This document shows positions 22,147 to 42,312 of a DNA stretch of 64,000 bases, piece after piece. The stretch's first letter is position 1, and each line of letters starts with the position of its first letter. The stretch lies in IMG/VR virus record IMGVR_UViG_3300042566_001780, positions 62,001-126,000 of that record; one strand, given 5' to 3'. Position numbers and translations under genes: made by a program. The notes under the pieces are model-generated. The model was not told the DNA's origin, did no database searches, and worked only from the letters and a program-made list of their open reading frames with translations.

Positions 22147-22512
22147 ATGGCTAAAAATCCAGGTTTAAAACGCGCTCATGAAACCGATGAGTATACCCAA
22201 GAAATGATTATGGAATTACAGAAGTGTTCTGTAGATCCAATTTATTTCATGGAGAAATATGTAAAAGTGCAACACCCCGTAAAGGGATCTGTGCCATTTG
22301 TTCTTTATGACTACCAAAAAGAAATGGTAATGGGGATACATGAGAATAGATCTACAATTTTGCTCCTGAGTCGCCAACTGGGAAAGTGTTTTTTTGGGTC
22401 CACAAAACTGCTAAATATTGTTAAGCCAACGGGCTTTAAAAAATATTTACTTAAGTTATTGGACAAGGAAACATATGACAACTTATTTCGCCCAAGCTCT
22501 ACAGAAGAATAA
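22147..22512 (+). CDS. terL: terminase large subunit part 1 (80 aa) plus split intein 1 N-fragment (41 aa, from 22387)
   Basis: DPIYF..LYDYQ..SRQLGK followed by intein block A CFFGST. Confidence 0.9.
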   Translation: MAKNPGLKRAHETDEYTQEMIMELQKCSVDPIYFMEKYVKVQHPVKGSVPFVLYDYQKEMVMGIHENRSTILLLSRQLGKCFFGSTKLLNIVKPTGFKKYLLKLLDKETYDNLFRPSSTEE

Positions 22513-23572
22513 AACCAAAACTCTTTTCACCAATTTGAATAAATGCCCAGTCTGCGAATCTACATTTTCAGATAATGAAGGTCATGGCAAATTTTGCTCT
22601 AAAGCGTGCTCTTCTAAAATAGAAAAGATGTGCATAATTTGCAATAAGAAAATTATTAGCAAAAAGCCTGACAAATTTTGCTCTAAGGCATGTCGTGATG
22701 TACCTGGCAAAATTAAACTAAACGAAAAGAGAAAAGCTGAAGGCGGAGTGCAATGTCTTATTTGCGGGGATTATGGTAAATCATTAGCATTACATCTTAA
22801 GAAACTCCATAACATTAGTGCTGAAGATTATCGAAATCAGTATGGTGGTAAAACAGTATGTGAATCTACTTCCACTAAGCTTTCTGAATTAACATCTGGA
22901 GAAAACAATCCATGGTATAACCACGGTGGTACTATTTCTCCATTCTCCAAGAACAACAAAAAGTTCATTGGTCTTTCTGAAGAAGAAAAACAGCAGAAGG
23001 TTAATGAAGCAGTTGATGCTTATATCAAAACTACCCCAAAAGAAAATCGTCCGATGAATGTTGAGTATTGGATCAAACGCGGTATGACTGAGGAAGAAGC
23101 AAAAGCACAAGTTTCTAAAAGACAAACTACTTTCAGCTTAGAGAAATGTATTGAGCGCTATGGTGAAGAAGCAGGTAAAGCTCGTTGGCAAGAACGGCAA
23201 GAAAAATGGCACAAAAATTATAAAAAGAGCAATTACAGCCAAGTCTCCCAAAGATTATTCTTTAACCTAGTTGAAGAATATCCTGATGCTATGTTTGCTG
23301 AGCACGGTTCTGAATTTGTCTTTAGGACCAAAACGGGATCAGTTTTCAAATTAGATTTTTGGGTACCATCTTCTAAACATTTGATTGAATTTGATGGTGA
23401 CTATTGGCATGGAAAACGAGATGCAATCGCAAACCCTAATAGGTCAGCTAATAGAGATAAACAAATTTTAGAAACAGATAGTGAAATAAAAATCTTACAC
23501 GTCAAAGAGCGCGATTTCTACAAGGATCCAGAAGGAACAATCCAAAAATGCAAAGACTTCTTAAAAACTTAA
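22475..23572 (+). mobile_element. free-standing Vsr-like homing endonuclease inside fractured terL
   Basis: Zn-finger repeats, KRQTTFSLEKCIERYG, LDFW..IEFDGDYWH; AAGGA RBS; CTAAATA at 22411. Confidence 0.8.
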
Positions 23573-24642
23573 AGCAGCGTCTTATTGATTGGTGCTTGCA
23601 GAAACAAGAAATTACCATCAAAGAACTTTTTCAATCATCAAATCCTTACCAAGTTTCCATTGATGATCTTACTGGAAATTTGAAATTTGTCCAAGAAGGC
23701 CATACTGAACGGTTAGTCCAAACTCCAACAGGCTGGGCACCTATCAAACGAGTTCTCCAAACTGTGCCATATCAAGCATGGCAATTGCGTGTTGATAGTT
23801 TAGAACCATTGATTGCAGCAGATGAGCATATCATTATGACTGAATCTGGCGAAAAATGGATGAAGGACTTATCACCCGGAGATTTAGTTCATACTATTAA
23901 TGGACTAAAGCCCGTTGAATCTATTCAAAATTTGGATAGATATGAAACTATGTATGACTTGGAATTAGATGACGATGGTCACGTCTTCTACACCAATGGT
24001 ATTTTGAGCCATAATACGACAGTAGCAGCCATGTATATTCTATGGTTTGCTACATTTCATGCGGCAAAAAGATGTGTCATTGCATCTAAAGCAATGAACC
24101 ATGCTGTGGAAATTATGTCTCGTATTAAATTTGCTTACGAGGAATTGCCGAGCTGGATTAAAAGTGGCTGTACCTTCTATAATAGAACTAGTATCGAATT
24201 TTCAAATAAATCTGTCATCGTTTCTGAGGCAACATCAGAGAAAACAGGTCGAGGTTCTTCGCCATCTATTATTTTCCTTGATGAGATTGCGTTTATTTCG
24301 CGCAGAATTCAAGAAGAAATGTGGAGTTCTTTAACTCCAGCATTAAGTACGGGCGGCAAATTTATTGTAACCTCTACACCTAATGGAGATTCTGATCTAT
24401 TTGCTACATTATGGCGTGGAGCAAATGCTGGTACAAATGGTTTTACGCCAATGCAGTTCTTATGGTGGCGCCATCCTGATCGAGATCAGGCTTATTATGA
24501 CGATATGGTTGGGAAACTCGGGCCGGTAAAATCCGCCCAAGAGTTAAACTGTGCCTCATATGACACTCTATTAGACACTTCTATAGGTAATTTAACTATT
24601 GAAGAGTTGTATACGCGGTTGTGCGGCAATCAGGGAGAGTAA
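23548..24642 (+). CDS. terL: intein 1 C-fragment (156 aa), terminase part 2 (178 aa), intein 2 N-fragment (30 aa)
   Basis: MYDLE..NGILSHN/TTV; Walker B IIFLDE; STPNG; AQELN/CASYDT. Confidence 0.9.
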   Translation: MQRLLKNLKQRLIDWCLQKQEITIKELFQSSNPYQVSIDDLTGNLKFVQEGHTERLVQTPTGWAPIKRVLQTVPYQAWQLRVDSLEPLIAADEHIIMTESGEKWMKDLSPGDLVHTINGLKPVESIQNLDRYETMYDLELDDDGHVFYTNGILSHNTTVAAMYILWFATFHAAKRCVIASKAMNHAVEIMSRIKFAYEELPSWIKSGCTFYNRTSIEFSNKSVIVSEATSEKTGRGSSPSIIFLDEIAFISRRIQEEMWSSLTPALSTGGKFIVTSTPNGDSDLFATLWRGANAGTNGFTPMQFLWWRHPDRDQAYYDDMVGKLGPVKSAQELNCASYDTLLDTSIGNLTIEELYTRLCGNQGE

Positions 24643-24644
24643 GT

Positions 24645-25751
24645 ATGGCATCAAATCAAACAATTGCACTCAATTATGAAGGCGTTAAAGTTCTTACCCC
24701 AACTGGTTATCAGTATTTTACTGGTATAAGCAGATCCTGGCATGAAGAAATTATTGAGATAAAGACGGCAAATAGAAGTATTAAAGCCGGAGTAAAGCAT
24801 AAATTCTTAACTTTAGATGGTTGGGTCCAATCTAGAGATTTAAAAGTTGGCGATGCTTTAGTCAATAATCAATGTGAAGATGAATGCATTACTGAAATAA
24901 ACATCTTAGCTGAACCTCAGTGGATGTATGACTTATTAGATGTTGAGTCCGGTAATACATATGTAGCTAATGGGCTTATTTGTCATAATTGCGAGTTTCT
25001 CTCAAGCGATGCGCTGCTAATTAGCTCGGTAAAGCTGCATCAAATCAAATATGAAAAGCCTATTTTTGAATCAATGGGATTTAAATTTTGGGTACCAGAA
25101 GAAGCGCTTGGTGGTAAAGGCAAAATATATCTAGTAGGTTTAGATCCAGCTACTGGGGGCGGGAATGATTTTTCTGTTATCGAAATATTTGATTTTCCTG
25201 GGTTAAATCAAATTGGAGAATTTCGCTCTAATGAAATCAACATTCCATTATTGTATGCTAAACTGTCGTGGATTTTAAAGAAGCTTACAGCCAATGTCAA
25301 TGGTGGCATTGCTGAAGTATCATGGACATTTGAGCGTAATGGCATTGGCGAAGCGATTGGTGCGTTATACTTTAATGATGAGAAACAAGTTGAAGAAGCA
25401 GATTTGTTTAATGATCATCATACAAAGTTTGGGGTGTATACAACTGGAAAAACGAAGATTTTGAATTGTTTGCAGTTGAAGACACTGGTTGAAAAGATCC
25501 ATAATGGTTTGAACATCAAGAGCGAACTGCTTATACATGAACTGAAGAACTTTGTGGCAAAGGGTGGTGGGTATGAGGCCAAGTCGGGTTCTACGGATGA
25601 CGCGGTGATGGCGACGATCTTGATCATGCGGTTGCTAAAGCGGCTTTCAGAGTATAATGAAGAAGCTTTTTCAACAGTCCATGAGTACGTTGACCCGAAT
25701 GCCGACATACCTGCAGAAGATTCTGATTCACCTCTGCCAATAATTCTATGA
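24645..25751 (+). CDS. terL: intein 2 C-fragment (115 aa) plus terminase nuclease domain (253 aa)
   Basis: GGGAG RBS; MYDLL..NGLICHN/CEFLSS; GLDPATG, FERN, DDAVMA. Confidence 0.9.
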   Translation: MASNQTIALNYEGVKVLTPTGYQYFTGISRSWHEEIIEIKTANRSIKAGVKHKFLTLDGWVQSRDLKVGDALVNNQCEDECITEINILAEPQWMYDLLDVESGNTYVANGLICHNCEFLSSDALLISSVKLHQIKYEKPIFESMGFKFWVPEEALGGKGKIYLVGLDPATGGGNDFSVIEIFDFPGLNQIGEFRSNEINIPLLYAKLSWILKKLTANVNGGIAEVSWTFERNGIGEAIGALYFNDEKQVEEADLFNDHHTKFGVYTTGKTKILNCLQLKTLVEKIHNGLNIKSELLIHELKNFVAKGGGYEAKSGSTDDAVMATILIMRLLKRLSEYNEEAFSTVHEYVDPNADIPAEDSDSPLPIIL

Positions 25752-26071
25752 GCACACTATCCATGTGGGAAATTCTTGTTCCCACTCTTCGTCGAGTCGA
25801 TGGGAAACCGTATCGCACTCGCTACCATCGCATATGGGATGAGAAAGTTCGGTCCATCACTGGTGGGTTGACGATCTTGACCCCAGCAAAAGGTCAGTGG
25901 GTAGCACCATGTGGACAACTCTATTCTGAGCGAATGATTCCAGTTCGGATCATGGCTACTCGTGAGCAGATTGAGCAAATTATTGATCACACGATCGTCT
26001 ACTATGATCAGCTTGCCGTTCTTTGTTATAGAATTAGCGATGAAGTTATTATGCGTTACGCAGAGGAATGA
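25748..26071 (+). CDS. hypothetical protein
   Basis: Coupled ORF; GGLTILTPAKGQW. Confidence 0.6.
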   Translation: MSTLSMWEILVPTLRRVDGKPYRTRYHRIWDEKVRSITGGLTILTPAKGQWVAPCGQLYSERMIPVRIMATREQIEQIIDHTIVYYDQLAVLCYRISDEVIMRYAEE

Positions 26072-26074
26072 AGT

Positions 26075-26269
26075 ATGAGTCAAAATCTGCGCACTGTCAA
26101 AAAGAAGCAAGGTGATGAATGGATCACTGTTCGATTGGAGAACGTCTCAATTGGTGATACCTTTATCATGCTAGATGATGGCGTTCGATTTGGTGATGAA
26201 TGGATTGCTATGTCTGAACCTACTCTTCGAGACGGGATTTGGGGAATCAATGCAAAAGCAAAGGAATAA
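26075..26269 (+). CDS. hypothetical protein
   Basis: Short ORF in operon. Confidence 0.5.
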   Translation: MSQNLRTVKKKQGDEWITVRLENVSIGDTFIMLDDGVRFGDEWIAMSEPTLRDGIWGINAKAKE

Positions 26270-26272
26270 AGA

Positions 26273-26557
26273 ATGAATTTTCCAGATCTAGTGAATGGTG
26301 GATTTGAGGCTTGTGCCTCAATTTTCATTTTGAACCACTGCAGAGTTTTGTGGAAATCAAAACAAGCAAACGGTGTTTCTGTAGTAAGCACCATGTTCTT
26401 TTTGGCATGGGGATTGTGGAATCTTTTCTACTATCCTCATCTTGGTCAAATGTTTAGCTTCTACGCGGGAATTGCAGTAGTGCTAGCAAACTTGATTTGG
26501 ATTGGGTTCATCCTCAAGATTCGCATGATGGAAAAGAAAAATGTACTGGGAAGATGA
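26273..26557 (+). CDS. small three-TM membrane protein, PQ-loop/SemiSWEET-like
   Basis: KQANGVS..WGLWNLFYY, three hydrophobic helices. Confidence 0.5.
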   Translation: MNFPDLVNGGFEACASIFILNHCRVLWKSKQANGVSVVSTMFFLAWGLWNLFYYPHLGQMFSFYAGIAVVLANLIWIGFILKIRMMEKKNVLGR

Positions 26558-26789
26558 AGAGGATGAAGTTCCACAATTCAATCATGAGCTTCGAGCTGCA
26601 GCAGAAGAGGGCATTGAATGGTTGTCTGGTGGAAAAAGAAAAGCGCCAATGATGAAGGGCCGCGCTGATGGTTCTTGTGGTGTTTGTGAAAAGCCAGTTG
26701 AAGCTAGATCAGGTAACAAATTCTATTGTTTGAATTGTCAATCTTATGGTTATGTTCGCATGTGGTATGCTGCAGATCCAGATCTGTAA
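26541..26789 (+). CDS. zinc-ribbon hypothetical protein
   Basis: CGVC..CLNC. Confidence 0.5.
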   Translation: MYWEDEEDEVPQFNHELRAAAEEGIEWLSGGKRKAPMMKGRADGSCGVCEKPVEARSGNKFYCLNCQSYGYVRMWYAADPDL

Positions 26790-26831
26790 CTAAAACTGTT
26801 ACACTTTTCTTGGTGAGGTTGAACGTTTTTA

Positions 26832-26848
26832 GTGTACAATTCATCCAT
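26832..26848 (+). promoter_or_regulatory. early promoter -10/start motif GTGTACAATTCATCCAT
   Basis: Same motif at 30010, 50510, 62791 and 20417-20434 (minus). Confidence 0.6.
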
Positions 26849-26874
26849 CGCAACATCAACTTCACATAAACATC

Positions 26875-27318
26875 ATGTACTTCGAACTGGTCAAAGGTAA
26901 AGTCACTCAGGTATCTGAGAAAGCCCCCACTTACAAAGTTGACTGGACGTATGACACAAAAACTGGCACTGGTTGGACTTCTACTCGTGACATCAAGTCG
27001 TATGAAGAAACCATTCGTATCGCAGAAGAAATTTCTGCCCTGACGGAAAAGTTTCATCTGCCAGTTGATTGTGGTGATTGTGTCTATCCGCGGTATGATG
27101 TCATTCTTCCTCCTGCCATTGGTGACAAAGTCAGCCGCAGTTTCAACGGTGACACAACTCCCTGTGGTGAAATTGTAAAAATTACTCCTAAGTGGAGAAT
27201 TACAACCTCGGATGGTGTAAAATTCAATCGTGTGAAGAACACTGGAAGCTGGAAAGTTATTGGCGGCTATCAATCTTTGGTCAATGGACACTATCATGAA
27301 CGCAACCCTCACTTTTGA
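26875..27318 (+). CDS. early hypothetical protein
   Basis: ORF directly after the early motif. Confidence 0.65.
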   Translation: MYFELVKGKVTQVSEKAPTYKVDWTYDTKTGTGWTSTRDIKSYEETIRIAEEISALTEKFHLPVDCGDCVYPRYDVILPPAIGDKVSRSFNGDTTPCGEIVKITPKWRITTSDGVKFNRVKNTGSWKVIGGYQSLVNGHYHERNPHF

Positions 27319-27319
27319 A

Positions 27320-27547
27320 ATGACTGCAGACGAACTCAAATTCAAGCAACCCCGAAGCTTGATTTCTCGAATGATTGCTGGTTCTCTGACTAGCTATGTC
27401 AATGAACTTCGCGCTGAAGGCAAAGACAAAGAACATGTGCTGAAGCAAGCACTGTTTATGATCGAGTCCCACCGCAAGCATGTCGGTTTCACGACCGAGA
27501 CCCAAAAAGTTTTGAAGGAAAAAATCAATGAGCTCTTCGAAGGTTGA
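27320..27547 (+). CDS. hypothetical protein
   Basis: Likely start ATG 27320 in ORF 27260..27547. Confidence 0.5.
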   Translation: MTADELKFKQPRSLISRMIAGSLTSYVNELRAEGKDKEHVLKQALFMIESHRKHVGFTTETQKVLKEKINELFEG

Positions 27548-27869
27548 TCCTATGGTGAAAGCAATTGCTATTGAAGCTTTTGAAGCTGCAGCAGTCGCAA
27601 CCCAAAAGTACTTGGATGAAAATCCCGGTCAATGGTACCCTTGTGGTTTTGCATGGGTCAAAATCAAGCCAGCACGTGGAAAGTTGGTGTCTTACTTGAA
27701 GGAAGAAAAGCTGGGACGTACTGATGAGTTTGAAGGCGGTTTCAGCGTGTGGAATCCTTCTGGTCATGCTACTCAATGGATGGATGCAAAACGCGCCGGT
27801 GCAGTAGCATTTGCTGAAGTTCTGAAGAAGTATGGTATTAACGCCTTCGCTCAAACTCGGATTGATTGA
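27528..27869 (+). CDS. conserved phage hypothetical protein
   Basis: PCGFAWV..TQWMDAK..A.AFA motif. Confidence 0.65.
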   Translation: MSSSKVDPMVKAIAIEAFEAAAVATQKYLDENPGQWYPCGFAWVKIKPARGKLVSYLKEEKLGRTDEFEGGFSVWNPSGHATQWMDAKRAGAVAFAEVLKKYGINAFAQTRID

Positions 27870-28225
27870 TAATGAAAATCAAAGTCCTTGATCGAAGTGT
27901 GATGCTTGGGAATATGAGTGATCTTCACGGGATGACTCCTGAAGAAGTAGCAAACTATTTCCATTCAATCCACAAGGATTATGAAAAGGAAACGTTCAAT
28001 CAAGGCCATGAAGTGAAGATGCGCTTCATCTATGGTTACGGTGACATTGAATTGGAAATTTTCCGTCTTGAAACTGACAGAGAGTTTGAAAAACGAGTTG
28101 CAAAAATAAAGCGAGAAGCGGAAAAAGAAGCTCGCGAAAAAGAATTGCAAGCAAAGAAAAAAGAGGGTGCAGAGTACAAGACTTTCTTGCGGCTCAAGAA
28201 AAAATTTGAAGGCAGCGAAAAATGA
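27866..28225 (+). CDS. hypothetical protein
   Basis: RLETDREFEKR coiled coil ending LKKKFE. Confidence 0.6.
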   Translation: MIMKIKVLDRSVMLGNMSDLHGMTPEEVANYFHSIHKDYEKETFNQGHEVKMRFIYGYGDIELEIFRLETDREFEKRVAKIKREAEKEAREKELQAKKKEGAEYKTFLRLKKKFEGSEK

Positions 28226-28638
28226 AAAAAGATGTGTTAGAATTTGCAGAAGCTGCGGGAATTCGATACAACCACAAAACTGCGGCAAAGATCACAAAGT
28301 TTGCTCAGCTGATTTTAGCTGAGCTGATCAAAGAGATCAATGCACAACCCAATCCGCAAAATCTCAATTACAAACCTTCTGAGACCTATGCGTATTTGGT
28401 CCAAAATCATTTTGATCTTGAGATCAACGAATTCACTGGTGTAAAATTCTCGAAAGTTTCAAAGAACACTGATGTGATGACTTTGAAGGAATTTGAAGAA
28501 GCTTGCGAAATGATCATGTTCACTCAGGATGACGGTGATGGTTATTTCATGAAATCCGAAACTGAAGAATCAAACATTAGCGTGTGGGGTTATGAAACTC
28601 CATCTTGGGATACCCATGTAGCTTGGTACAACAAGTAA
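28222..28638 (+). CDS. three-helix paralog family domain fused to C-terminal FTxDDGDGY..VAWYNK domain
   Basis: KFAQLILAE..QNHFDLE followed by a second module. Confidence 0.55.
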   Translation: MKKDVLEFAEAAGIRYNHKTAAKITKFAQLILAELIKEINAQPNPQNLNYKPSETYAYLVQNHFDLEINEFTGVKFSKVSKNTDVMTLKEFEEACEMIMFTQDDGDGYFMKSETEESNISVWGYETPSWDTHVAWYNK

Positions 28639-28643
28639 TTATT

Positions 28644-32277: not shown

Positions 32278-32278
32278 A

Positions 32279-33757: not shown

Positions 33758-33760
33758 AGA

Positions 33761-33988: not shown

Positions 33989-33995
33989 ATAGATT

Positions 33996-34585: not shown

Positions 34586-34599
34586 TCTAAGGAAATGAA

Positions 34600-35135: not shown

Positions 35136-35928
35136 CAAAGACATTATCAATCAACTCCAAGACTGCATTCGTGATCTACTTGAGTTTGTAGAATCGCACA
35201 GTCATCATTGGAATGGCGTAGTTGCGCAGCATCCGCAAATTTTGGCAGAAGTTGCACATCCGCTATTGGAATTGAATGCAGCTGACATGAAGATGCCGGT
35301 GAAGACTCCAACACCTCCAGCAATGGCGGAAATGAGCGATATCATTTTTGCTGAAGGATGGAATGCATGCGTTGAGGCATTCTTCGATGGTGTTGAATCA
35401 GATCCGCCAACAATTATCACCGTAACTGAGACACTTGGAAAAGAGCCAGTTGGGTGGCAAGTTTGGTCTGGCGTGATGGATATGCGCCCACATTGGCCGC
35501 CCTTTCAAACTAAACCAGAAGCTGAAGCTCTTGCTGAGCGTATCAAAAGTAATACAGAAGTTCGTCCTGTGTATGCTGGTGAAATGAAACAATCACCAAA
35601 GCAGTACTTCTATAAGAATAACGAATGCACTGCACAATCCGCAAAAGATCCTGGCTGCAAATGTTGGTGGGACATTGGCACAGGTCCATTAAAAGATGGG
35701 ACTCCTACTGATTTTCGTGAAAAGCCAAAGGTGTCACAATGTGAACTTCCTCCCGCTGGTTGGATTTGCACTAGACAAGCAGGACATGATGGCCCCTGTG
35801 CAGCCCATAATGCTGAATCTATCATTGAGCTTCAAACTCAACTAGAAAATTTGAAAAAGGTCGTTGATGTCAAAATGAATGAGATTAGAAATGTCATTAT
35901 GTCTACCTTGACTAAGGATTTGAAATGA
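35125..35928 (+). CDS. mosaic hypothetical protein (Ead/Eaa-like modules)
   Basis: GWNAC, EPVGW..RPVY, PPAGWICTR..HDGPCAA modules. Confidence 0.5.
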   Translation: MTSNKDIINQLQDCIRDLLEFVESHSHHWNGVVAQHPQILAEVAHPLLELNAADMKMPVKTPTPPAMAEMSDIIFAEGWNACVEAFFDGVESDPPTIITVTETLGKEPVGWQVWSGVMDMRPHWPPFQTKPEAEALAERIKSNTEVRPVYAGEMKQSPKQYFYKNNECTAQSAKDPGCKCWWDIGTGPLKDGTPTDFREKPKVSQCELPPAGWICTRQAGHDGPCAAHNAESIIELQTQLENLKKVVDVKMNEIRNVIMSTLTKDLK

Positions 35929-36275
35929 TGAAGTGCTTTAGCATCGATGATGAGAACTTCAACTATGATTCTCTCGGTGATTTAATAATGTCAACTAGTC
36001 CTGAAGTGGGCGATTTCTACTATGAAGCAGATTGTGTTGATGTGATTGTTGACAATTATCTGGTGAATCATTTGCTTGAAGATGCCGATGATTTGCTATA
36101 TGACGATCTCGGTGAAATCTATGATAGTGATTTTTCAAAGGTGTCTGATGAAGCCAAGAAAGAATTGCTAATTTTGCTGCAAACCTGGGCAGCAAAGCAC
36201 GTCAACTTGGATCGCTATTGGAAAATTGTTGGGGAAAGCAGGAAGCTGCAATTCACCAAAGAAGATCTTGAATGA
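35925..36275 (+). CDS. acidic hypothetical protein
   Basis: Coupled ORF. Confidence 0.55.
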   Translation: MMKCFSIDDENFNYDSLGDLIMSTSPEVGDFYYEADCVDVIVDNYLVNHLLEDADDLLYDDLGEIYDSDFSKVSDEAKKELLILLQTWAAKHVNLDRYWKIVGESRKLQFTKEDLE

Positions 36276-36285
36276 AGGATTGAAA

Positions 36286-36948
36286 ATGTTTGAAGAAGAA
36301 TGGGACGCGGCTGATTGGGTCAAATTGCTTAAGCTAGCTGCAAATGGAAAAACCACTTTGTCAAAAGACCAGCTCAAAGAAGTAGCTGCGTTTCTTTTTC
36401 AACAAGCTACAGAAATTGTGAAATTGAAAAGTAAGTTGGAAGAGGAGGGTGAGATTGTTATCACTACTAGTTTTGAAACTGGCAAGTGTCTTGCTGTCAC
36501 ACGCCAAGATGAAGAAGGTCGAATCCTAAGAATTGTTTGGGAAGCACCTGATGTTGTTGAACAGGATGAGCCGAGCGTAGAAGAAGCTCTTCGTGTTTTG
36601 CATAGTGTAGAGACCTCAGTGCAAAGTGGAATCAATGTCACCGATGGTTGGAGAATTTTGCGAAATCTCATTAGCAAGTTCAAAATTGTCCCTCACGGTG
36701 TGCAAAAAGCTATTGAGAATGCGGGATTCACTTTGGTGAAAAACCAGTTTGGTTATCATCTCATGAAACTTGGCAAAATTGAGGCACATTCTGTTCAAGA
36801 TGAAGAATCTCAACCAGTAGCTTGGAGACTTCGTGATGAAGAGCCTGGAATGAAACCTCGATGGGTCTACTATGATGAGGACGATTTTGTAAAAGGCGTC
36901 ATTCCACATGAGGTTTTTCCAAAGCTTCAAAAGCTCTACACAAAATGA
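36286..36948 (+). CDS. mosaic hypothetical protein
   Basis: AVTRQDEEGRILRIVW and QPVAW modules; start uncertain. Confidence 0.5.
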   Translation: MFEEEWDAADWVKLLKLAANGKTTLSKDQLKEVAAFLFQQATEIVKLKSKLEEEGEIVITTSFETGKCLAVTRQDEEGRILRIVWEAPDVVEQDEPSVEEALRVLHSVETSVQSGINVTDGWRILRNLISKFKIVPHGVQKAIENAGFTLVKNQFGYHLMKLGKIEAHSVQDEESQPVAWRLRDEEPGMKPRWVYYDEDDFVKGVIPHEVFPKLQKLYTK

Positions 36949-37178
36949 AACTAACTGCACAACAGAAGTTTGACCTACTTCCAAAAATTCAACTCAAGGG
37001 CGAAAAAAAGCCTACTACTCAAGTTTGGTTGACCCAAAAAGATGCACTCAACTATGCAGATCAAATTGAATCTGCTGCTAGTGAACATTTTCAAAAACGT
37101 ATCGATCAATTGGAAGAAATCATTGAAGAGCAACGCAGAGCTCTAGTGATGATCAAAGATTATTTTGGAGTAGAATGA
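36945..37178 (+). CDS. hypothetical protein ending in the family C-terminus MIKDYFGVE
   Basis: Unrelated body with repeat-derived end. Confidence 0.55.
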   Translation: MKLTAQQKFDLLPKIQLKGEKKPTTQVWLTQKDALNYADQIESAASEHFQKRIDQLEEIIEEQRRALVMIKDYFGVE

Positions 37179-37221
37179 TGCATGAACGAATTCAAGCATT
37201 GATTGAGGATGCCACTAGAAT
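37146..37221 (+). repeat. 76-bp direct repeat, copy 2
   Basis: 74/76 identical to 31997-32072. Confidence 0.85.
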
Positions 37222-37375
37222 GAACCGAATTTTGAAAAATGGTCTTATTACGGCCTACATCATTTTTATGTCACTTGCTTTTCTTGGAAAAACTGGTGAC
37301 TATTTTGTAGCTGGTGTTGCTGCACTATCAATGTTTGCAGTTTGGTCATTTGCTGTCAAAATTAAAACAAAATGA
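37175..37375 (+). CDS. two-TM protein with repeat-derived N-terminus
   Basis: MMHERIQALIEDATR followed by a hydrophobic body. Confidence 0.5.
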   Translation: MMHERIQALIEDATRMNRILKNGLITAYIIFMSLAFLGKTGDYFVAGVAALSMFAVWSFAVKIKTK

Positions 37376-37698
37376 AAACAAAAGATTTTCCATCAGTTGT
37401 AGCTGCAAGAAAAGTTGTAGAAAAACAGGCTGCGCGCTATCATCAAATGATGGGCACTAATCATCAAATGAATGAAGCAACCAAGCAGCTCATCATCAAA
37501 TCCGGTCTTTCCCCAACTGAACAATGTTATGATGCGCATGGTTACTGTTTTGAAGCAACTAACCAAAAGCTGAAAGCACTGGTCGAGAATGTAGTTCGAC
37601 AAGCTATTTGGATTGCTTATCATAGTCATGCAATGAATAAGGATGCCAAATTCACCGAGCATCTGGATGAAGTGAAACGTTACTATGGGATTGAATGA
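37372..37698 (+). CDS. three-helix paralog family member (divergent)
   Basis: MNEATKQL..VKRYYGIE. Confidence 0.55.
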   Translation: MKTKDFPSVVAARKVVEKQAARYHQMMGTNHQMNEATKQLIIKSGLSPTEQCYDAHGYCFEATNQKLKALVENVVRQAIWIAYHSHAMNKDAKFTEHLDEVKRYYGIE

Positions 37699-37842
37699 TG
37701 AAGGGTCCTCGAGAATTGAAGAACTATGTAGCTCGATTTCGCAAAGAGCTCAAGGCAATGCATTGGGATGACCTGCTTATCTTCAAACTGCAACGCTGTA
37801 AGAAATGGTTCAAACGGGACAAACGAATCAAGAAAGAAGACT

Positions 37843-38067
37843 ATGAATGAAATAGTGAAGCAACTTTTGGATGAATCAACCCAAACTATTGAAATTATTG
37901 ATCCTGACACCAAGCTTACGCATCACCGGTCTTTCATTGATCAAGAAGAATTTGTGAAGTTGCTTGTTGAAGAAATCCAGCACCGATGCATGCAAGAATG
38001 GTTTGGCGATTCTCTTGAAGATATTATCTATGATAGATTGCCGAAGCACTTTGGACTAACATCCTAA
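37843..38067 (+). CDS. three-helix paralog family member
   Basis: MNEIVKQLL..EFVKLLVEE..PKHFGL. Confidence 0.6.
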   Translation: MNEIVKQLLDESTQTIEIIDPDTKLTHHRSFIDQEEFVKLLVEEIQHRCMQEWFGDSLEDIIYDRLPKHFGLTS

Positions 38068-38088
38068 TATTTGTAGAATTCACCAGAT

Positions 38089-38118
38089 GAGGCCCAGAGA
38101 TGAAAATTTCTGGGCCTC
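38089..38118 (+). terminator. hairpin/terminator ending the early operon
   Basis: GAGGCCCAGAGA..TTTCTGGGCCTC. Confidence 0.6.
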
Positions 38119-38263
38119 AATTAGTTTCACATCCATCAAAACAAAGCGCCCTCAGAGCCCTCGGCAATCCTAAAACTTTGTTACAAATAGGATGTAAAAA
38201 AGTTACAATAGACTCTTATCGAAATTTGTTGATGAAATTGGAAGAAATCATCACCAGATTTTG

Positions 38264-38271
38264 CTAAATAG
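38264..38271 (+). promoter_or_regulatory. late promoter CTAAATAG
   Basis: Upstream of the ssb gene. Confidence 0.55.
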
Positions 38272-38320
38272 ATTTGTCTGCAAAGACATTTTTTAACTTT
38301 TCAAAACTTTAGGAGTTTTT

Positions 38321-39244
38321 ATGACAACCAAACGTTCCCTTGCTGATCTTGCTGCTGCTTTTTCTTCCAAAGCTAATGAAGGCGGATCCAGCCCCACTTG
38401 GAAGCTTTTCTTCAATTTCTGGAAAGCTCCTGTCGATAGCGTATCCACTGTTCGTTTCTTGCCTGATGCTAATCAAGATAACCCTATGGGTTTCCTTGTT
38501 GAAAATCTAGTGCATGAGCTGACGATCAATGGCAAACGCGAAAAAGTGCCTTGCTTGAAGATGTACGGTGAATCTTGTCCAGTTTGTGAGCTTTCTGCTC
38601 AATACTACGATGAGAAGAATCCGCTGCATTCTGAAGAACTTGGTAAGAAGTTCTATCGTAAAAAGTCTTACATTGGCCAAGTGCTTGTGATTGACACTCC
38701 CGTTGAACATGATGGTGACCAACTTGTCAAGCTAATTGAATTCGGTCCTCAGGTCTTTAAGCAAATCCAAGCTGCATTCCAGTCTGGTGATCTTGAAGAA
38801 GCCCCCTATGAGCTTAAGGGTGGTTACAATTTCCGTTTCCGTAAGACTTTGACTGGCGCAGGTCAGAATTCTTACACCACTTCTAACTTTGCTCCTAAGC
38901 AAACTGACGTAGCAGACGATACGCTGAATGCAATTACACTGTATGATCTTTCTCAGTATCGCACTCCGAAAATGGATCGCACTGCTTTGGAAGCTATGCT
39001 CGTAGCTGCTCAGACCGGTGAAAGCTATACTGCAGAATCCGATGCTCCTGCTAAGACTGCAGACACAGTGAACAAGCTTCGCGATCGTCTTGCACAATCG
39101 GCCGATGCTGATGATGCTCCTGCGGCAGAAACTCCTAAGGCATCTGCTCCTGAAGAGTCGTCTGGTGGCAACAAGCAATCTGTGGTGGAAATGCTTCGCG
39201 CACGTGCTGCAGCTGCTAAGGCTGCACAGCAAGCTGCTCAGTAA
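38321..39244 (+). CDS. single-stranded DNA-binding protein, T4 gp32-like
   Basis: VRFLPD, H..C..CPVC zinc site, GYNFRFRK, Y..SNF. Confidence 0.9.
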   Translation: MTTKRSLADLAAAFSSKANEGGSSPTWKLFFNFWKAPVDSVSTVRFLPDANQDNPMGFLVENLVHELTINGKREKVPCLKMYGESCPVCELSAQYYDEKNPLHSEELGKKFYRKKSYIGQVLVIDTPVEHDGDQLVKLIEFGPQVFKQIQAAFQSGDLEEAPYELKGGYNFRFRKTLTGAGQNSYTTSNFAPKQTDVADDTLNAITLYDLSQYRTPKMDRTALEAMLVAAQTGESYTAESDAPAKTADTVNKLRDRLAQSADADDAPAAETPKASAPEESSGGNKQSVVEMLRARAAAAKAAQQAAQ

Positions 39245-39257
39245 TTTTTACTAGCAC

Positions 39258-39295
39258 GAGGCCCATCTTGTTTACTCGAGATGGGCCTTATTTTT
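39258..39295 (+). terminator. intrinsic terminator
   Basis: GAGGCCCATCTTG..CGAGATGGGCCTT then ATTTTT. Confidence 0.75.
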
Positions 39296-39317
39296 CTTTG
39301 ATTTTTGGAGAATAATT

Positions 39318-39593
39318 ATGGGTTTACCATTTTTAGACAAGTTTAAAAAAGAAGTTGCTAAGCTTGAAACGGTTGGCGTCGGCATTAAAGAAACAGAAGT
39401 TTGGTTGAGTACTGGCAATTATGCATTGAATCGCGCATTGTCTGGTGATTTCAAAAAAGGCGTTCCGCTCAGTAAGATCACCCTGTTCGCGGGTCCCAGT
39501 GGGTGTTTGCCGGCTGATGAGAAGGTTGGAATTTATGTTTTTAAATCGCAGCCCTCAATAACAACGCCAATCTTTTTTGAAGAAAAAAAGTAA
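39318..39593 (+). CDS. uvsX: UvsX/RecA part 1 (62 aa) plus split intein N-fragment (29 aa, from 39504)
   Basis: STGNYALNRALSG..FAGPSG then CLPADEKV. Confidence 0.9.
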   Translation: MGLPFLDKFKKEVAKLETVGVGIKETEVWLSTGNYALNRALSGDFKKGVPLSKITLFAGPSGCLPADEKVGIYVFKSQPSITTPIFFEEKK

Positions 39594-39601
39594 AAAGTGT
39601 G

Positions 39602-39634
39602 ACGCTCCTATAAATAGCTTATTTATAGGAGCGT
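39602..39634 (+). promoter_or_regulatory. late promoter TATAAATA in a perfect 15-bp hairpin that covers the endonuclease RBS
   Basis: ACGCTCCTATAAATA-GCT-TATTTATAGGAGCGT; ATG at 39638. Confidence 0.8.
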
Positions 39635-39637
39635 ATT

Positions 39638-40879
39638 ATGACAGCAAAACTTTACGATTTATTTCTTCATGCTAACACTGGCAAAAAACCAGTTAAACCG
39701 AGACCATTAGTATCTTTTGAAACATTTAAAGACATAATTCTCTCAAATATCAGTAATATATTTGAAGATGATGCGTTTTTAAAAAATAAATATGATCAAT
39801 ACTGTGCTTTATATAACAGTACAGTGTTAACAAAAATTAGTGGTGTAGCAGCTATTTTAGGATTTGAATCAAAAAATACATGCTTAAATTATTGGCTTTC
39901 ACGTGGATGGCCCGCAGATATTGCATTAGAAAAACATCGAAATAGGCAAGCTACAGTTAAATTGGCAAATATAGCCAAATCGCACAATGTTTCAATGTCT
40001 GAAGCTAAAAGAATAAAAACTGAGAGACTTAATCGTGGAATAGAAACATTAAAAAATAAAAGCAATTACGATGAAATTTGCTATTCGCGTGGAAATAGTA
40101 TGCGAGTTTCATATTATGAAACTAAAATAAATCCCAAAACTGGAAATTTATATACGTCTAAAGAGGCAGCTGATTTAATTGCGCAAAAATCAGCAAAAAG
40201 AGCAACTAAATTTTGGGATGATGTACGCGCTGGGAGAAAAATTTATGATGCTTCGACATCGCTAAATTATTATCTGAAAAAGGGTATGACAGAAGATGAA
40301 GCGCGGGCAGCTTTAACCAAGAGGCAAACAACTTTTTCTAAGCAAATATGCATAGAAAAACATGGACATGATAAGGGATTAGAAATATTTAATAAAAGAC
40401 AGGAAAAATGGTTGGCTACTTTAAATTCTTTTTCTGATGAAGAGAAACAAAGAATTTTAATAGCAAAAACCAGTAAATCAAAATCATATTCTCAAGAAGC
40501 TACTAAATTTTTAATTAAACTTTTGGATAAACTTGGCATTTCTAGAAACTCAGAATATGTTAAAATGTGTGATAACGAAATGTTTTTATGGTCGCGAGAT
40601 AAAAAGATAGGTTTTTATGATTTAGCAATTGTAAATTTAAAAATAATTGTTGAATACCATGGATCATCATTTCATCCAAATCCAAATTTATCTGAGGATC
40701 AATTAAAATGCTGGATAAACCCAATTACTAAGGTGAGTGCATATGATCAAAGAAAAAGAGATTTTCAAAAACTGATAACTGCAAAAGAGCATGGATATAC
40801 AGTGTTTGAAGTTTGGGACGCAGACGATCATGATTCAAAAATTATTGAAATTTGTAACTTTATAAAGGAAAAACTATGA
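39638..40879 (+). mobile_element. free-standing Vsr-like homing endonuclease inside fractured uvsX
   Basis: KRQTTFSKQICIEKHG..RQEKW; YDL..IVEYHGSSFH..GYTVFEVW; locally very AT-rich. Confidence 0.8.
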
Positions 40880-42312
40880 GTACTTTTACCGCTGAAGTGA
40901 TGTTAGCAGAGTTGTTAGCTAATTTTTCATCGCAAGATTTGATCAAGAAAATTGGTATTTCTAAACCAACACTTAAAAAGCTTTATGATGGTGAAGCTAG
41001 CAATGAAGTGTTGTTTAAACTAGAACAGGCTTTTTTGGCACATGTAAGAGCAAACATTAAACAGATTTCGATGTCAAATTTAAAGTCGATTTTGGAATCT
41101 GGTAATACTGTAATGGTGGATACGCCTGATGGGCCTCAGGCGATTATTAAATTTTTTAATAAAGATGCTAGGTCTATTGTTAAACTCAGCACAGCAAATG
41201 GAAAAACACTAACATGTTCAAATGACCATTTAGTTGAAACTGATTTTGGGTGGGCGTATGCAAATAAAGATGTAGTTGGCAAAAATGTACTAACTGGTGA
41301 AGGCTTTAATCCTGTAATTAAAGTTGAAGACCTAGCACCTGAACCCGTTTTCGACTTTGAAGTAGCACATCCAAACCATCGTTATTGGGGCGGTGATGGT
41401 ATTTCTTCTCACAATTCTGGAAAATCCTTCATAGCTTCCAATCTTGCATTGCAGGCTCAAAAAGATGGATACCATGTTCTGTATCTTGACTCCGAGCATG
41501 CTATTGATGTTGATTATCTGAAGAAGATTGGTGTTGACGTTAGTGAAGATAGTCTTACATATCTCTCAGTCACTACCATTGAAGATGTCAACTCGGTGCT
41601 TTCCGAATTCTTTAGTGGGTATGTTAAGGCGTATGGTAAGGATTCTACGACTGCACCCAAAACCCTGATTGTTCTTGATAGTCTTGCTATGTTGAGTTCT
41701 GCTACTGAGATGGAGAACTATGACAAAGGCGGCATCATTAAAGCGGACCAAGGTATTCTCGCAAAACGTCGTAAAGCAATGCTTCGACTAGCTACTGGTC
41801 ATTTGGGTCGGTTGCCAGTCAACATGGTGATTACCGACCACGTGTACCCCGCTGATATTATGGCAGGTGACGGTGCATGGGCAATTACAAACTCCACTAA
41901 ATTCTCATCTTCAATTATTGGTATTGTCACAAAGCTCAAGCTAAAAGAAGAAGGTGAAATTACTGGTGTTCGCATGCGTTTTGAAACGTATAAGAGCCGA
42001 TTTGCAAAGCTTGGCACTAAGGTTGAGCTTGAAGTTCCTTATAACAAGGGAATGAGCCCTTTTAGTGGATTGCTTCCGCTTCTTGAAAGCATGGGAGTTA
42101 TTGCTAAAGGTACTAAGCCTGGTGAAAAGCTTCTTTGGGTATGCGAATGGACAGATGAAGATGGCGAAATTCATGAAGTCAAGTTCAAGGAAAAAGATTT
42201 GACTGATGACATTGTTCAGGAACTTCTTAAGCATCCTCTTTGCGCTGCAACAATGGCTCGCCCAGCTACTAAAGAAGATGAACCTTCTCTTGAAGATGAC
42301 GATGTAGAGTAA
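40876..42312 (+). CDS. uvsX: HTH-like segment plus split intein C-fragment (180 aa total), then UvsX part 2 (298 aa)
   Basis: TCSNDH, VFDFEV..SSHN/SGKS; YLDSE, IVLDSL. Confidence 0.9.
   Translation: MSTFTAEVMLAELLANFSSQDLIKKIGISKPTLKKLYDGEASNEVLFKLEQAFLAHVRANIKQISMSNLKSILESGNTVMVDTPDGPQAIIKFFNKDARSIVKLSTANGKTLTCSNDHLVETDFGWAYANKDVVGKNVLTGEGFNPVIKVEDLAPEPVFDFEVAHPNHRYWGGDGISSHNSGKSFIASNLALQAQKDGYHVLYLDSEHAIDVDYLKKIGVDVSEDSLTYLSVTTIEDVNSVLSEFFSGYVKAYGKDSTTAPKTLIVLDSLAMLSSATEMENYDKGGIIKADQGILAKRRKAMLRLATGHLGRLPVNMVITDHVYPADIMAGDGAWAITNSTKFSSSIIGIVTKLKLKEEGEITGVRMRFETYKSRFAKLGTKVELEVPYNKGMSPFSGLLPLLESMGVIAKGTKPGEKLLWVCEWTDEDGEIHEVKFKEKDLTDDIVQELLKHPLCAATMARPATKEDEPSLEDDDVE

What the first reader, a model, noticed from the sequence alone, without database searches (positions are those of the whole stretch)
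22387..41415. Three co-encoded split inteins in one genome imply orthogonality, or cross-spliced chimeras
TerL-1 (41/156 aa), TerL-2 (30/115 aa) and UvsX (29/180 aa) fragment pairs could coexist in an infected cell. Without specificity, IntN1 with IntC2 would skip the ATPase core, piece 2 could cyclise via its own IntC1 and IntN2, and UvsX/TerL hybrids could form because both are split within Walker A. Selection for mutual orthogonality is an inference.
Basis: inference. Interest (0 to 1): 0.7.

Follow-up and report, generated by a model that had tools for sequence, protein, structure and literature searches.

The report
Multiple split inteins in a jumbo phage
A 292-kb phage encodes its DNA-packaging motor in three pieces and its recombinase in two, to be stitched together by three unrelated self-splicing split inteins (five in the whole genome); these are new members of known intein families, and their specificity most likely comes from separate ancestry rather than from tuning inside this genome.

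Summary
TerL is encoded as three ORFs and UvsX as two. The intein fragment lengths are 41/156, 30/115 and 29/180 aa, exactly at the stated coordinates. Intein-free relatives show the exteins abutting residue for residue, so the boundaries are exact. All splicing residues are intact and the intein parts are under purifying selection.

The count is too low. The genome holds five split inteins (also gp46/Rad50-like and topoisomerase II, outside the window) and one contiguous NrdA mini-intein.

The three inteins belong to different known families: TerL-2 resembles Cat/AceL-TerL, UvsX resembles VidaL, and TerL-1 belongs to a P-loop-site family. They share 21-26% identity in IntC and nothing detectable in IntN. 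They are also split at different positions (S1 versus S2), and each is present or absent independently in relatives.

Orthogonality is therefore likely, but it is inherited from separate acquisitions, not shown to be selected in situ. A four-chain fold placed IntN1 only on IntC1.

Three-piece TerL recurs in at least 8 metagenomic protein clusters. Conserved extra segments at the two S1 split sites (a helix pair in TerL-1, a four-helix head in UvsX) are the most novel feature.

The parts
22147..22386 (+). TerL N-extein (80 aa), ending in the Walker A SRQLGK
   Evidence: Matches PHROG 5989 terminase large subunit at 3e-23. It is 52-71% identical to the N-terminus of TerL in relatives, where it abuts the next extein directly.
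22387..22512 (+). IntN1 of the TerL-1 split intein (41 aa plus stop). It has Cys1, a block A hairpin (residues 1-14), and a conserved tail KPTGFKKYLLKLLDKETYDNLF
   Evidence: The tail motif is conserved in alleles L018, L067 and L068. In the fold, residues 1-14 and 18-33 contact IntC1.
22475..23572 (+). Free-standing homing endonuclease gene HEG1 (365 aa from ATG 22475). It overlaps the end of IntN1 and the start of IntC1. It has a Ros/MucR-type zinc finger and a C-terminal Vsr/PD-(D/E)xK-like nuclease (..EFDGDYWHG..)
   Evidence: Pfam ROS_MUCR 1.4e-6; MTES_1575 5.9e-4, below its cut-off. It is a paralogue of HEG2 and of a topoisomerase-locus HEG. It is 36% identical to the HEG at the same place in L018.
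23548..24015 (+). IntC1 of TerL-1 (156 aa). Head helix is residues 2-16 (..LIDWCL..), block N2 is ITIKELF, followed by the HINT core ending ..ILSHN. The +1 residue is Thr
   Evidence: PDB gp41-1 6qaz 2.5e-6. PF14890. The head is conserved in at least 25 homologues. dN/dS is 0.10 against a 96% identical allele.
24016..24549 (+). TerL middle extein (178 aa, ATPase core after Walker A)
   Evidence: Pfam Terminase_6N. It is 78-81% identical to the same stretch of uninterrupted TerL in relatives.
24550..24642 (+). IntN2 of the TerL-2 split intein (30 aa plus stop). It has Cys1, block A and the first helix (..LTIEELYTRL), which makes it an S2-type split
   Evidence: Alleles are present in L011, P0016, P0020, P0029 and P0033. 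dN/dS is 0.12.
24645..24989 (+). IntC2 of TerL-2 (115 aa from ATG 24645), ending ..LICHN. The +1 residue is Cys (CEFLSS). No HEG lies between IntN2 and IntC2
   Evidence: PDB CatC 6dsl_B 1.8e-10, with the alignment running into the C-extein CE. PF14890 8e-10.
24990..25751 (+). TerL C-extein (253 aa, nuclease half)
   Evidence: It is 51-71% identical to relatives and directly follows the middle extein there.
39318..39503 (+). UvsX N-extein (62 aa), ending ..AGPSG inside Walker A
   Evidence: PHROG 97 UvsX-like recombinase 5.6e-10. It is 63-90% identical to relatives and 100% identical in L066.
39504..39593 (+). IntN of the UvsX split intein (29 aa plus stop). The core is CLPADEKVGIYV, followed by a conserved tail
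   Evidence: Alleles in L065 and L066 keep CLPA.E.V.[IV]Y.FK..P. PA5oct has only 17 aa.
39602..39634 (+). Perfect 15-bp hairpin that buries the Shine-Dalgarno sequence of HEG2 and contains TATAAATA
   Evidence: dG -21 kcal/mol, z -5.6, 0 of 200 shuffles fold as well.
39638..40879 (+). Free-standing homing endonuclease gene HEG2 (413 aa), a paralogue of HEG1
   Evidence: 27% identical to HEG1 and 29-32% identical to the topoisomerase-locus HEG over about 200 aa. A HEG sits at the same place in PA5oct and L065.
40876..41058 (+). Head of the UvsX IntC (residues 1-61), a four-helix HTH-like domain
   Evidence: AF2 pLDDT is about 90 for helices 6-16, 19-26, 30-37 and 43-59. Weak Pfam HTH_26 hit, 2.4e-3. 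It is conserved in at least 8 alleles and absent in PA5oct and P0013.
41059..41415 (+). HINT core of the UvsX IntC (119 aa), ending ..ISSHN. The +1 residue is Ser
   Evidence: PDB VidaL 6vgv 1.1e-22 by sequence and Foldseek 4e-9, 40% identity.
41416..42312 (+). UvsX C-extein (298 aa, RecA core from SGKS)
   Evidence: Pfam RecA 1.2e-11. It is 61-78% identical to uninterrupted UvsX of relatives.

Best explanation
Two essential phage genes have been invaded by three unrelated mobile inteins, each naturally split close to its N-terminus ('atypical' split).

Two of the inteins (TerL-1, UvsX) have the 'fractured gene' layout, with a free-standing Vsr-like homing endonuclease gene between the halves. 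The third (TerL-2) has no endonuclease gene.

After translation, each short IntN docks on its own IntC, completes a HINT fold and trans-splices. This gives a 511-aa TerL from three polypeptides (natural tandem trans-splicing) and a 360-aa UvsX from two. This step is inferred.

Pairing is specific for three reasons:
- The inteins come from different lineages.
- They are split at different structural positions: S1 for TerL-1 and UvsX, S2 for TerL-2.
- The two S1 inteins carry family-specific extra segments at the split site. TerL-1 has a tail helix on IntN packing on a head helix of IntC. UvsX has a conserved IntN tail plus a four-helix head on IntC.

Orthogonality is thus mostly inherited with each element. 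Selection acts at most as a filter on which combinations persist.
For: Shown:
- The extein pieces rejoin exactly into the uninterrupted proteins of relatives.
- Cys1, the block B His, the block F Asp and the terminal HN plus a +1 Thr/Cys/Ser are present in all inteins.
- dN/dS against a 96% identical allele is 0.10 for IntC1 and 0.12 for IntN2, compared with 0.06 for the extein.
- Family matches are Cat (1.8e-10), VidaL (1.1e-22; Foldseek 4e-9) and gp41-1 (2.5e-6).
- IntC identities are 21-26% and the IntN parts show no significant similarity.
- The inteins are present or absent independently. L018 has site 1 only, L011 site 2 only, L020-23 a third site. Many relatives have none, and five near-complete related jumbo phages have 0-1 intein.
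- The same trio occurs in a second 277-kb contig at about 54-55% identity.
- Middle pieces of type IntC1-extein-IntN occur in at least 8 clusters.
- The S1 and S2 natural split positions are as described in PMC13014065.

Model only: a four-chain fold (IntC1, IntC2, IntN2, and IntN1 as partner) scored 0.63 against a best control of 0.00. That mark was reached by 51 of 78 solved complexes and 2 of 108 mismatched pairs. The counts hold only roughly here, because this job is unlike the calibration. The runs agree in at least 99% of contacts and the partner's pLDDT is at least 77. All confident contacts are with IntC1. With IntC1 replaced and IntC2 still present, the score is 0.00.
Against: - No splicing was measured.
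- The fold may be recalled from solved inteins, and it tested one IntN only.
- Pinto et al. 2020 (PMC7090010) found that most residual cross-reactivity in a 24x24 matrix involved inteins split at atypical sites, which is the type found here. Divergence alone is therefore no guarantee.
- TerL-1 and the gp46 intein of the same genome are 40% identical in IntC and share the junction residues.
- The AF2 model of piece 2 was too poor to say whether IntN2 can fold back on IntC1.
Confidence: 0.72

Rival explanations
1. One reading: the co-resident inteins have been shaped by selection inside this genome lineage to avoid each other, so orthogonality is an evolved trait.
For: - Mis-splicing of an essential motor would be costly.
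- Atypically split inteins are the ones that tend to cross-react (PMC7090010).
- The IntN tails and IntC heads are conserved and could be specificity devices.
- The same trio is kept in a second genome.
Against: - Each intein's nearest relatives sit at the same site in other phages that lack the other inteins.
- The tail and head modules are also present in alleles that occur alone. L018 has only TerL-1.
- The family-level differences and the S1/S2 split positions predate this genome (PMC13014065).
Confidence: 0.15
2. Timing rather than molecular specificity keeps UvsX and TerL fragments apart. UvsX is made early or in the middle of infection and TerL late, so cross-pairs seldom meet.
For: In T4-type phages uvsX is an early/middle gene and gene 17 a late gene (established knowledge). 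A TATAAATA motif lies 31 nt upstream of TerL piece 1.
Against: - This cannot apply to TerL-1 versus TerL-2, which are co-linear in one gene string.
- Proteins persist through infection.
- TATAAATA is not enriched in the window: 4 matches against 2.7 expected. The promoter type is therefore unproven.
Confidence: 0.08
3. The pieces are not spliced. Either they are debris of genes killed by endonuclease insertion, or the fragments work as a non-covalent complex, as T4 gp39/gp60 do.
For: HEG-split genes without inteins exist. One lies in this genome's own topoisomerase locus, and SbcD is described in PMC2677866.
Against: - All catalytic intein residues are kept.
- The intein parts are under purifying selection.
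- No second intact TerL or UvsX was noticed in the window's ORFs.
- The same layout recurs in many independent contigs.
Confidence: 0.04
4. Cross-spliced chimeras or a cyclised middle piece are made at meaningful levels and may even be used.
For: IntN2 with IntC1 would overlap rather than lack a structural element.
Against: - Identity is 26% or less.
- The split registers differ.
- IntN1 made no confident contact with IntC2 or IntN2.
- A TerL without its ATPase core has no obvious use.
Confidence: 0.03

Closest known systems
'Fractured genes' of Dassa et al. 2009 (PMC2677866): split intein halves flanking a free-standing GIY-YIG or Vsr-like homing endonuclease gene in phage DNA-metabolism genes, terminase included
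   Same: TerL-1 and UvsX have exactly this layout: N piece plus IntN, a HEG in another frame with overlaps, then IntC plus C piece. The HEGs carry a Vsr/PD-(D/E)xK-like C-terminal domain. HEG2 has a 5' hairpin like the control elements described there.
   Different: The inteins analysed there (for example gp41-1) are split at the canonical site. Here the split is near the N-terminus. TerL-2 has no HEG. Here several such loci sit in one complete genome, two of them in one protein.
AceL-TerL, GOS-TerL and their consensus Cat (PDB 6DSL): natural S2-type atypically split TerL inteins with IntN of 25-37 aa (PMC11766414, PMC13014065)
   Same: TerL-2 has a 30-aa IntN containing the first helix and a 115-aa IntC that matches CatC at 1.8e-10. 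It has Cys1 and +1 Cys followed by Glu.
   Different: The aligned regions share only modest residue identity.
VidaL intein (PDB 6VGV): S1-type atypically split intein with a 16-aa IntN
   Same: The UvsX IntC core matches at 1.1e-22 by sequence and is the top Foldseek hit (4e-9, 40% identity). The split lies before the first helix.
   Different: Here IntN is 29 aa with a conserved tail, and IntC carries a conserved 61-aa four-helix head that is absent from VidaL and from PA5oct.
TerL inteins of cultured phages: Vibrio phage VP-1 (MH363700), Kuttervirus such as Salmonella phage bering, and Agrobacterium phage Atu_ph07
   Same: They use the same two TerL sites. VP-1 has a contiguous intein after the Walker A Lys and a split intein at ..EYD|C... 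The Kuttervirus intein at site 1 is contiguous. Atu_ph07 has a site-1 split intein without a HEG.
   Different: In VP-1 only site 2 is split, and its IntN is fused to a GIY-YIG domain. None of these phages has both sites split with short IntN fragments.
Pseudomonas jumbo phages PA5oct and MIJ3
   Same: UvsX is fractured at the same Walker A position, with a Vsr-like HEG between an 81-aa and a 423-aa ORF. A PolB split intein is reported for MIJ3 (PMC6892783).
   Different: The UvsX pieces are annotated as hypothetical or structural proteins there. The allele is 38% identical in the IntC core and has no head domain.
Engineered tandem trans-splicing with orthogonal split inteins (for example the 15-member set of Pinto et al. 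2020, PMC7090010; three-segment labelling cited in PMC13014065)
   Same: One protein is assembled from three fragments by two non-cross-reacting split inteins.
   Different: That is an engineered design. This is a natural case in an essential gene, and both inteins have short IntN fragments.

Membership tests
Class 1 intein (HINT splicing domain), split form | Nucleophile (Cys/Ser) as first intein residue | tested here: met
   Cys1 is present in IntN1, IntN2 and the UvsX IntN.
Class 1 intein (HINT splicing domain), split form | Block B His, block F Asp, terminal His-Asn and a +1 Cys/Ser/Thr | tested here: met
   H47, D90, H108 and N109 are invariant in alignment A3. The +1 residues are Thr, Cys and Ser.
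Class 1 intein (HINT splicing domain), split form | Removing the intein restores a conserved host protein without gap or overlap | tested here: met
   Exteins abut exactly in intein-free relatives.
Class 1 intein (HINT splicing domain), split form | HINT fold | tested here: met
   Pfam PF14890 for IntC1 and IntC2. PDB intein hits for all three. The AF2 model of the UvsX IntC matches only inteins.
Class 1 intein (HINT splicing domain), split form | Protein trans-splicing activity | not testable with these tools
   Support is indirect only: purifying selection and a predicted IntN1-IntC1 complex scoring 0.63 against a best control of 0.00.
Fractured gene (Dassa 2009) | Free-standing HEG ORF between the IntN-bearing and IntC-bearing ORFs | tested here: met
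   Met for TerL-1 (HEG1, 22475-23572) and UvsX (HEG2, 39638-40879). Not met for TerL-2, whose halves are 2 nt apart.
Fractured gene (Dassa 2009) | HEG of the GIY-YIG or Vsr-like family | tested here: inconclusive
   HEG1 hits MTES_1575 (a PD-(D/E)xK REase) at 5.9e-4, below the cut-off. HEG2 has no nuclease hit in Pfam. A neighbouring ORF (20445-22013) that shares a weak MTES_1575 hit but gave no blastp match to HEG1 or HEG2 hits Vsr at 3.5e-5, also below the cut-off. No match to a solved nuclease.
AceL-TerL / GOS-TerL / Cat (S2 atypically split TerL inteins) | Short IntN (25-37 aa) that includes the first helix, and a large IntC similar to Cat | tested here: met
   IntN2 is 30 aa with ..LTIEELYTRL. 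IntC2 matches CatC at 1.8e-10. Family ranges are from PMC13014065 and PMC11766414.
AceL-TerL / GOS-TerL / Cat (S2 atypically split TerL inteins) | Same insertion site in TerL | not testable with these tools
   The native flanks of AceL-TerL and GOS-TerL were not available. Only the CE at the +1/+2 positions of the Cat construct agrees.
VidaL-type (S1 atypically split) | Split right after the first beta-hairpin, with IntC carrying the first helix, and sequence similarity to VidaL | tested here: met
   The alignment to 6vgv starts at ..KQISMSNLKSI.. (block N2) of IntC, E 1.1e-22. Helix 66-74 appears in the model.
VidaL-type (S1 atypically split) | Ultra-short IntN (about 16 aa) and a minimal IntC | tested here: not met
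   IntN is 29 aa. IntC is 180 aa with a conserved 61-aa head. It works like VidaL but belongs to a distinct sub-family.

The most novel reading that the evidence does not exclude
The conserved extra segments at the two S1 split sites are natural pairing modules. In TerL-1 these are the IntN tail KPTG.KK.LLK..D..T.D..F and the IntC head helix ..LI.WCL... In UvsX they are the IntN tail and the four-helix IntC head. On this reading they raise affinity and enforce cognate choice among several co-resident short-IntN inteins. This genome would then offer a ready-made natural set of five mutually orthogonal split inteins, including a natural tandem trans-splicing system for an essential motor.
Probability: 0.3. 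Interest if true: 0.7.

Novelty: new variant of a known kind. Interest (0 to 1): 0.5.

Why it matters
Split inteins with short N-fragments are sought-after tools for protein labelling and multi-fragment assembly. Few natural ones are known, and they tend to cross-react.

Here four atypically split inteins and one canonical split intein coexist in one virus, two of them in a single essential protein. Nature has therefore already tested a compatible set.

The conserved tail and head segments suggest a way that specificity or affinity is added to a minimal IntN.

For phage biology, the comparison with intein-free relatives shows how fast endonuclease-driven elements can break up core genes. This genome has six inteins; five near-complete relatives have 0-1. 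A packaging motor assembled from three polypeptides recurs in environmental phages.

Tried and rejected
- Megablast of the TerL region against GenBank phages gave no match.
- phmmer of the 29- and 30-aa IntN peptides against the PDB found nothing; the queries are too short.
- An AF2 model of the whole middle piece (IntC1-extein-IntN2) was made to see whether IntN2 folds back on IntC1. Mean pLDDT was 57.5 and pTM 0.34, so it cannot be interpreted either way.
- Net charges of the fragments show no telling complementarity.
- TATAAATA as a late-promoter marker gave 4 matches against 2.7 expected, so it is not enriched.
- The inverted repeat upstream of TerL piece 1 is not a significant fold, z -1.0.
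- HEG1 against solved structures matched only a weak Ros zinc-finger hit.
- The primary papers on AceL-TerL, GOS-TerL and Cat are not held. Allelism of TerL-2 with those inteins therefore rests on the CatC match only.
- Literature searches for a natural protein assembled by two split inteins found none in the held library. This does not show that none has been described.
- An internal start at Met66 for the UvsX IntC was considered and rejected. It lies inside block N2. In addition, the upstream 61 residues are conserved in at least 8 alleles, including one without a HEG, where the ORF starts 16 nt after the N piece.

Full report
**What is there.** The window is bases 62,001-126,000 of a single 291,687-bp virus record, a jumbo phage. 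Between 22,147 and 25,751 on the + strand lie four ORFs.
- TerL piece 1 has an 80-aa extein ending in the Walker A SRQLGK, followed by a 41-aa IntN.
- A 365-aa endonuclease gene sits in another frame and overlaps both neighbours.
- TerL piece 2 has a 156-aa IntC ending SHN, a 178-aa ATPase core starting TTV, and a 30-aa IntN starting CASYDT.
- Two bases after the stop comes TerL piece 3, with a 115-aa IntC ending CHN and a 253-aa nuclease half starting CEFLSS.

From 39,318 to 42,312 lie three more ORFs.
- UvsX-N has a 62-aa extein ending AGPSG and a 29-aa IntN.
- A 413-aa endonuclease gene follows.
- UvsX-C has a 180-aa IntC ending SHN and a 298-aa extein starting SGKSF.

The 115-aa figure needs the ATG at 24,645, which has a good Shine-Dalgarno sequence.

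**The boundaries are exact.** IMG/VR holds relatives with 66-81% (TerL) and 61-90% (UvsX) identical exteins. In seven TerL loci (L012-L017, L019) and about 35 UvsX loci the extein pieces follow each other without a single residue missing or added. The junctions read ..SRQMGK|TTVAAMY....KQELD|CEFLSS.. and ..AGPSG|SGKSF... Splicing would therefore give a normal 511-aa TerL and a 360-aa UvsX. TerL-1 and the UvsX intein do sit inside Walker A motifs.

**They look active.**
- All three have Cys1, the block B His, the block F Asp, a terminal His-Asn and a +1 Thr, Cys or Ser.
- Against a 96% identical allele from another metagenome, dN/dS is 0.10 for IntC1 and 0.12 for IntN2. The extein between them gives 0.06.
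- TerL is indispensable. No intact second copy was noticed in the window's ORF lists.

Trans-splicing itself is inferred, not shown.

**The count is too low.** Three scans of the whole genome were run: Pfam PF14890, a profile built from the genome's own inteins, and a block-G pattern. They find six inteins. Besides the three above:
- A gp46/Rad50-like ATPase is split after its Walker A Lys. Its IntN is 34 aa, its IntC 128 aa, the +1 residue is Thr, and there is no HEG (genome 6,489-8,761, minus strand).
- A topoisomerase II large subunit carries a canonically split intein, with IntN 165 aa, IntC 51 aa and a HEG between them (genome 270,629-274,018).
- NrdA carries a contiguous 143-aa mini-intein inside the window (46,195-46,623).

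The orthogonality problem is therefore 5x5, not 3x3.

**Which inteins they are.**
- IntC2 matches the consensus atypical TerL intein CatC (6dsl_B) at 1.8e-10, and the alignment runs into the C-extein Cys-Glu.
- The UvsX IntC matches VidaL (6vgv) at 1.1e-22. VidaL is also the top structural hit of its AF2 model, at 4e-9 and 40% identity.
- IntC1 is nearest to gp41-1, but weakly, at 2.5e-6. Its real family is a large metagenomic group of inteins that sit after the Walker A Lys of TerL and of other P-loop proteins: AAA_2/ClpB-like, DnaB_C, ABC and AAA. The gp46 intein of this genome belongs to the same group. It is 40% identical to IntC1 over 101 aa (E 6e-26) and has the same Lys|Thr junction.

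Natural atypical splits are known at two positions. S1 lies after the first hairpin (VidaL, PolB16). S2 lies after the first helix (AceL-TerL, GOS-TerL) (PMC13014065). From the sequences, the block N2 helix (ITIKELF; ISMSNLKSI) lies in IntC for TerL-1 and UvsX, making them S1-type. It lies in IntN (LTIEELY; KIGEFHEMI) for TerL-2 and gp46, making them S2-type.

**Mobility and ancestry.** Relatives carry these elements independently.
- L018 has only the TerL-1 split intein with its HEG (IntN 59%, HEG 36%, IntC 52% identical).
- L011 has only IntN2.
- L020-23 have a different contiguous intein at a third TerL site.
- Most relatives have none.
- None of about 35 close UvsX relatives has an intein.
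- Five near-complete related jumbo phages of 310-350 kb give no PF14890 hit and a single hit to the genome's own intein profile.

Among cultured phages:
- Vibrio phage VP-1 has inteins at the same two TerL sites. Site 1 is contiguous, and site 2 is split with a GIY-YIG domain fused to IntN.
- Kuttervirus TerL has a contiguous site-1 intein.
- Atu_ph07 has a site-1 split intein without a HEG.
- PA5oct has the same fractured UvsX, which is not annotated as such.

A 2.9-kb contig encodes a UvsX N-extein 100% identical to ours. Its intein allele is only about 49% identical and has no HEG. Intein alleles therefore turn over faster than their host gene.

The layout of TerL-1 and UvsX is the 'fractured gene' arrangement with a Vsr-like HEG described by Dassa et al. 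2009 (PMC2677866). HEG1, HEG2 and one topoisomerase-locus HEG are paralogues. HEG2 is preceded by a perfect 15-bp hairpin that hides its ribosome-binding site.

**Three-piece TerL is not unique.** At least eight 90%-identity protein clusters are middle pieces of the form IntC1-ATPase core-IntN (P0016, P0020, P0023, P0029, P0030, P0033, P0035, P0039). Two more clusters use the third site. A 277-kb JGI contig has the three-piece TerL without HEGs together with the fractured UvsX. That is the same trio at about 54-55% identity. A 65-kb contig has a Vsr-like HEG at site 1 and an HNH HEG at site 2. I found no description of a natural protein assembled by two split inteins in the held literature, but the library lacks most subscription journals.

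**Specificity.** The three IntC parts are 21-26% identical pairwise. The IntN parts share nothing detectable beyond Cys1. The different split positions add a structural barrier.
- IntN1 or the UvsX IntN combined with IntC2 would lack the first helix.
- IntN2 combined with IntC1 or the UvsX IntC would have the helix twice.
- The two S1 inteins share a register but carry different extra segments.

In TerL-1 the most conserved part of IntN is not block A but the tail (KPTG.KK.LLK[IL].D..T.D..F in four alleles). IntC starts with a conserved helix (..LI.WCL..) that is present in all full-coverage homologues.

In the UvsX family, alleles with a 26-29-aa IntN have a 55-60-aa head on IntC. That head folds as four helices with pLDDT near 90. 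PA5oct-type alleles have a 17-aa IntN and no head.

One four-chain fold was run with IntC1, IntC2, IntN2, and IntN1 as partner.
- It scored 0.63, against a best control of 0.00.
- That mark was reached by 51 of 78 solved complexes and 2 of 108 mismatched pairs. The counts hold only roughly because the job differs from the calibration.
- The runs agree in at least 99% of contacts, and the partner's pLDDT is at least 77.
- All confident contacts of IntN1 are with IntC1. Residues 1-14 pair as a strand with IntC1 17-25 and touch the HINT core. The tail helix 18-33 packs on head residues 9-17.
- With IntC1 replaced and IntC2 still present, the score fell to 0.00.

This supports cognate choice in a model. 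It may partly reflect memory of solved inteins, and it says nothing about kinetics.

**Verdict on the interpretation.** Orthogonality is likely and biologically required within TerL. The data fit 'orthogonal by descent': separate acquisitions of already different elements, with selection at most filtering combinations. They do not show tuning inside this genome.

A caution comes from Pinto et al. 2020. In their 24x24 matrix, most residual cross-talk involved inteins split at atypical sites (PMC7090010). It should be extended to five pairs, with TerL-1/gp46 as the critical cells.

**Novelty.** The inteins are new members of known families in a known arrangement. Three features appear new relative to what I could read:
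- the obligatory three-fragment assembly of an essential protein by two short-IntN inteins;
- the load of five split inteins in one phage;
- the conserved tail and head segments at S1 split sites.

The last is the most interesting and the least proven.

Noticed in passing
window 46195-46623 (+), inside NrdA ORF 44920-47634: NrdA contains a contiguous 143-aa mini-intein (..YSSNL|CLAGNT...ILVHN|CQEIA..) with no endonuclease domain. It is a fourth intein in the window that the finding does not mention.
   Followed up: yes
outside the window: genome 6489-8761 (-), locus L008: A gp46/Rad50-like ATPase is split after its Walker A Lys by an S2-type atypical split intein (IntN 34 aa, IntC 128 aa, +1 Thr, no HEG). 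Its IntC is 40% identical to the TerL-1 IntC, making it the closest pair in the genome. Its IntN resembles the N-terminus of the contiguous TerL intein of Vibrio phage VP-1.
   Followed up: partly
outside the window: genome 270629-275677 (+), locus L009: The topoisomerase II large subunit carries a canonically split intein (IntN 165 aa, IntC 51 aa) with a HEG between the halves. The gene is then cut a second time by another HEG (274022-275110) with no intein at all, comparable to T4 genes 39/60.
   Followed up: partly
window 39602-39634 (+): A perfect 15-bp hairpin (dG -21 kcal/mol, z -5.6) buries the Shine-Dalgarno sequence of HEG2 and contains TATAAATA. This resembles the late-promoter-in-hairpin control of T4 intron and free-standing endonucleases. 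The same octamer lies 31 nt upstream of TerL piece 1 (22109-22116).
   Followed up: partly
window 20445-22013 (-), and paralogue at window 11436-12983 (-): A 522-aa ORF next to TerL on the opposite strand combines DUF7487 with weak Vsr-like and Mom-like hits. Its C-terminal 200 aa have a paralogue about 9 kb upstream, near a local GC peak (0.47 at 10001-12000). The function is unknown; it may be another endonuclease-derived gene.
   Followed up: no
loci L012-L016 (IMG/VR relatives), about 700 bp upstream of TerL: Intein-free relatives carry a second, diverged TerL-like N-terminal ATPase fragment (20-50% identical to E1 and E2) directly upstream of the real TerL. This window lacks it.
   Followed up: no
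L066 (ENA 2.9-kb contig) versus window 39318-41415: The UvsX N-extein is 100% identical to the window's, but the intein allele is only about 49% identical and has no HEG. This suggests intein replacement or very fast intein divergence between near-identical phages. HEG1 is likewise only 59% identical in a contig whose flanking IntC1 is 96% identical (L069).
   Followed up: partly
L065 6345-8147; protein P0005: In the 277-kb relative, UvsW carries a contiguous intein that the window's UvsW (42834-44276) lacks. P0005 is a contiguous UvsX intein allele with a further ~80-aa insert lying upstream of the head-like segment, between the IntN-like tail and that segment. This marks the position as an insertion hot spot.
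   Followed up: no
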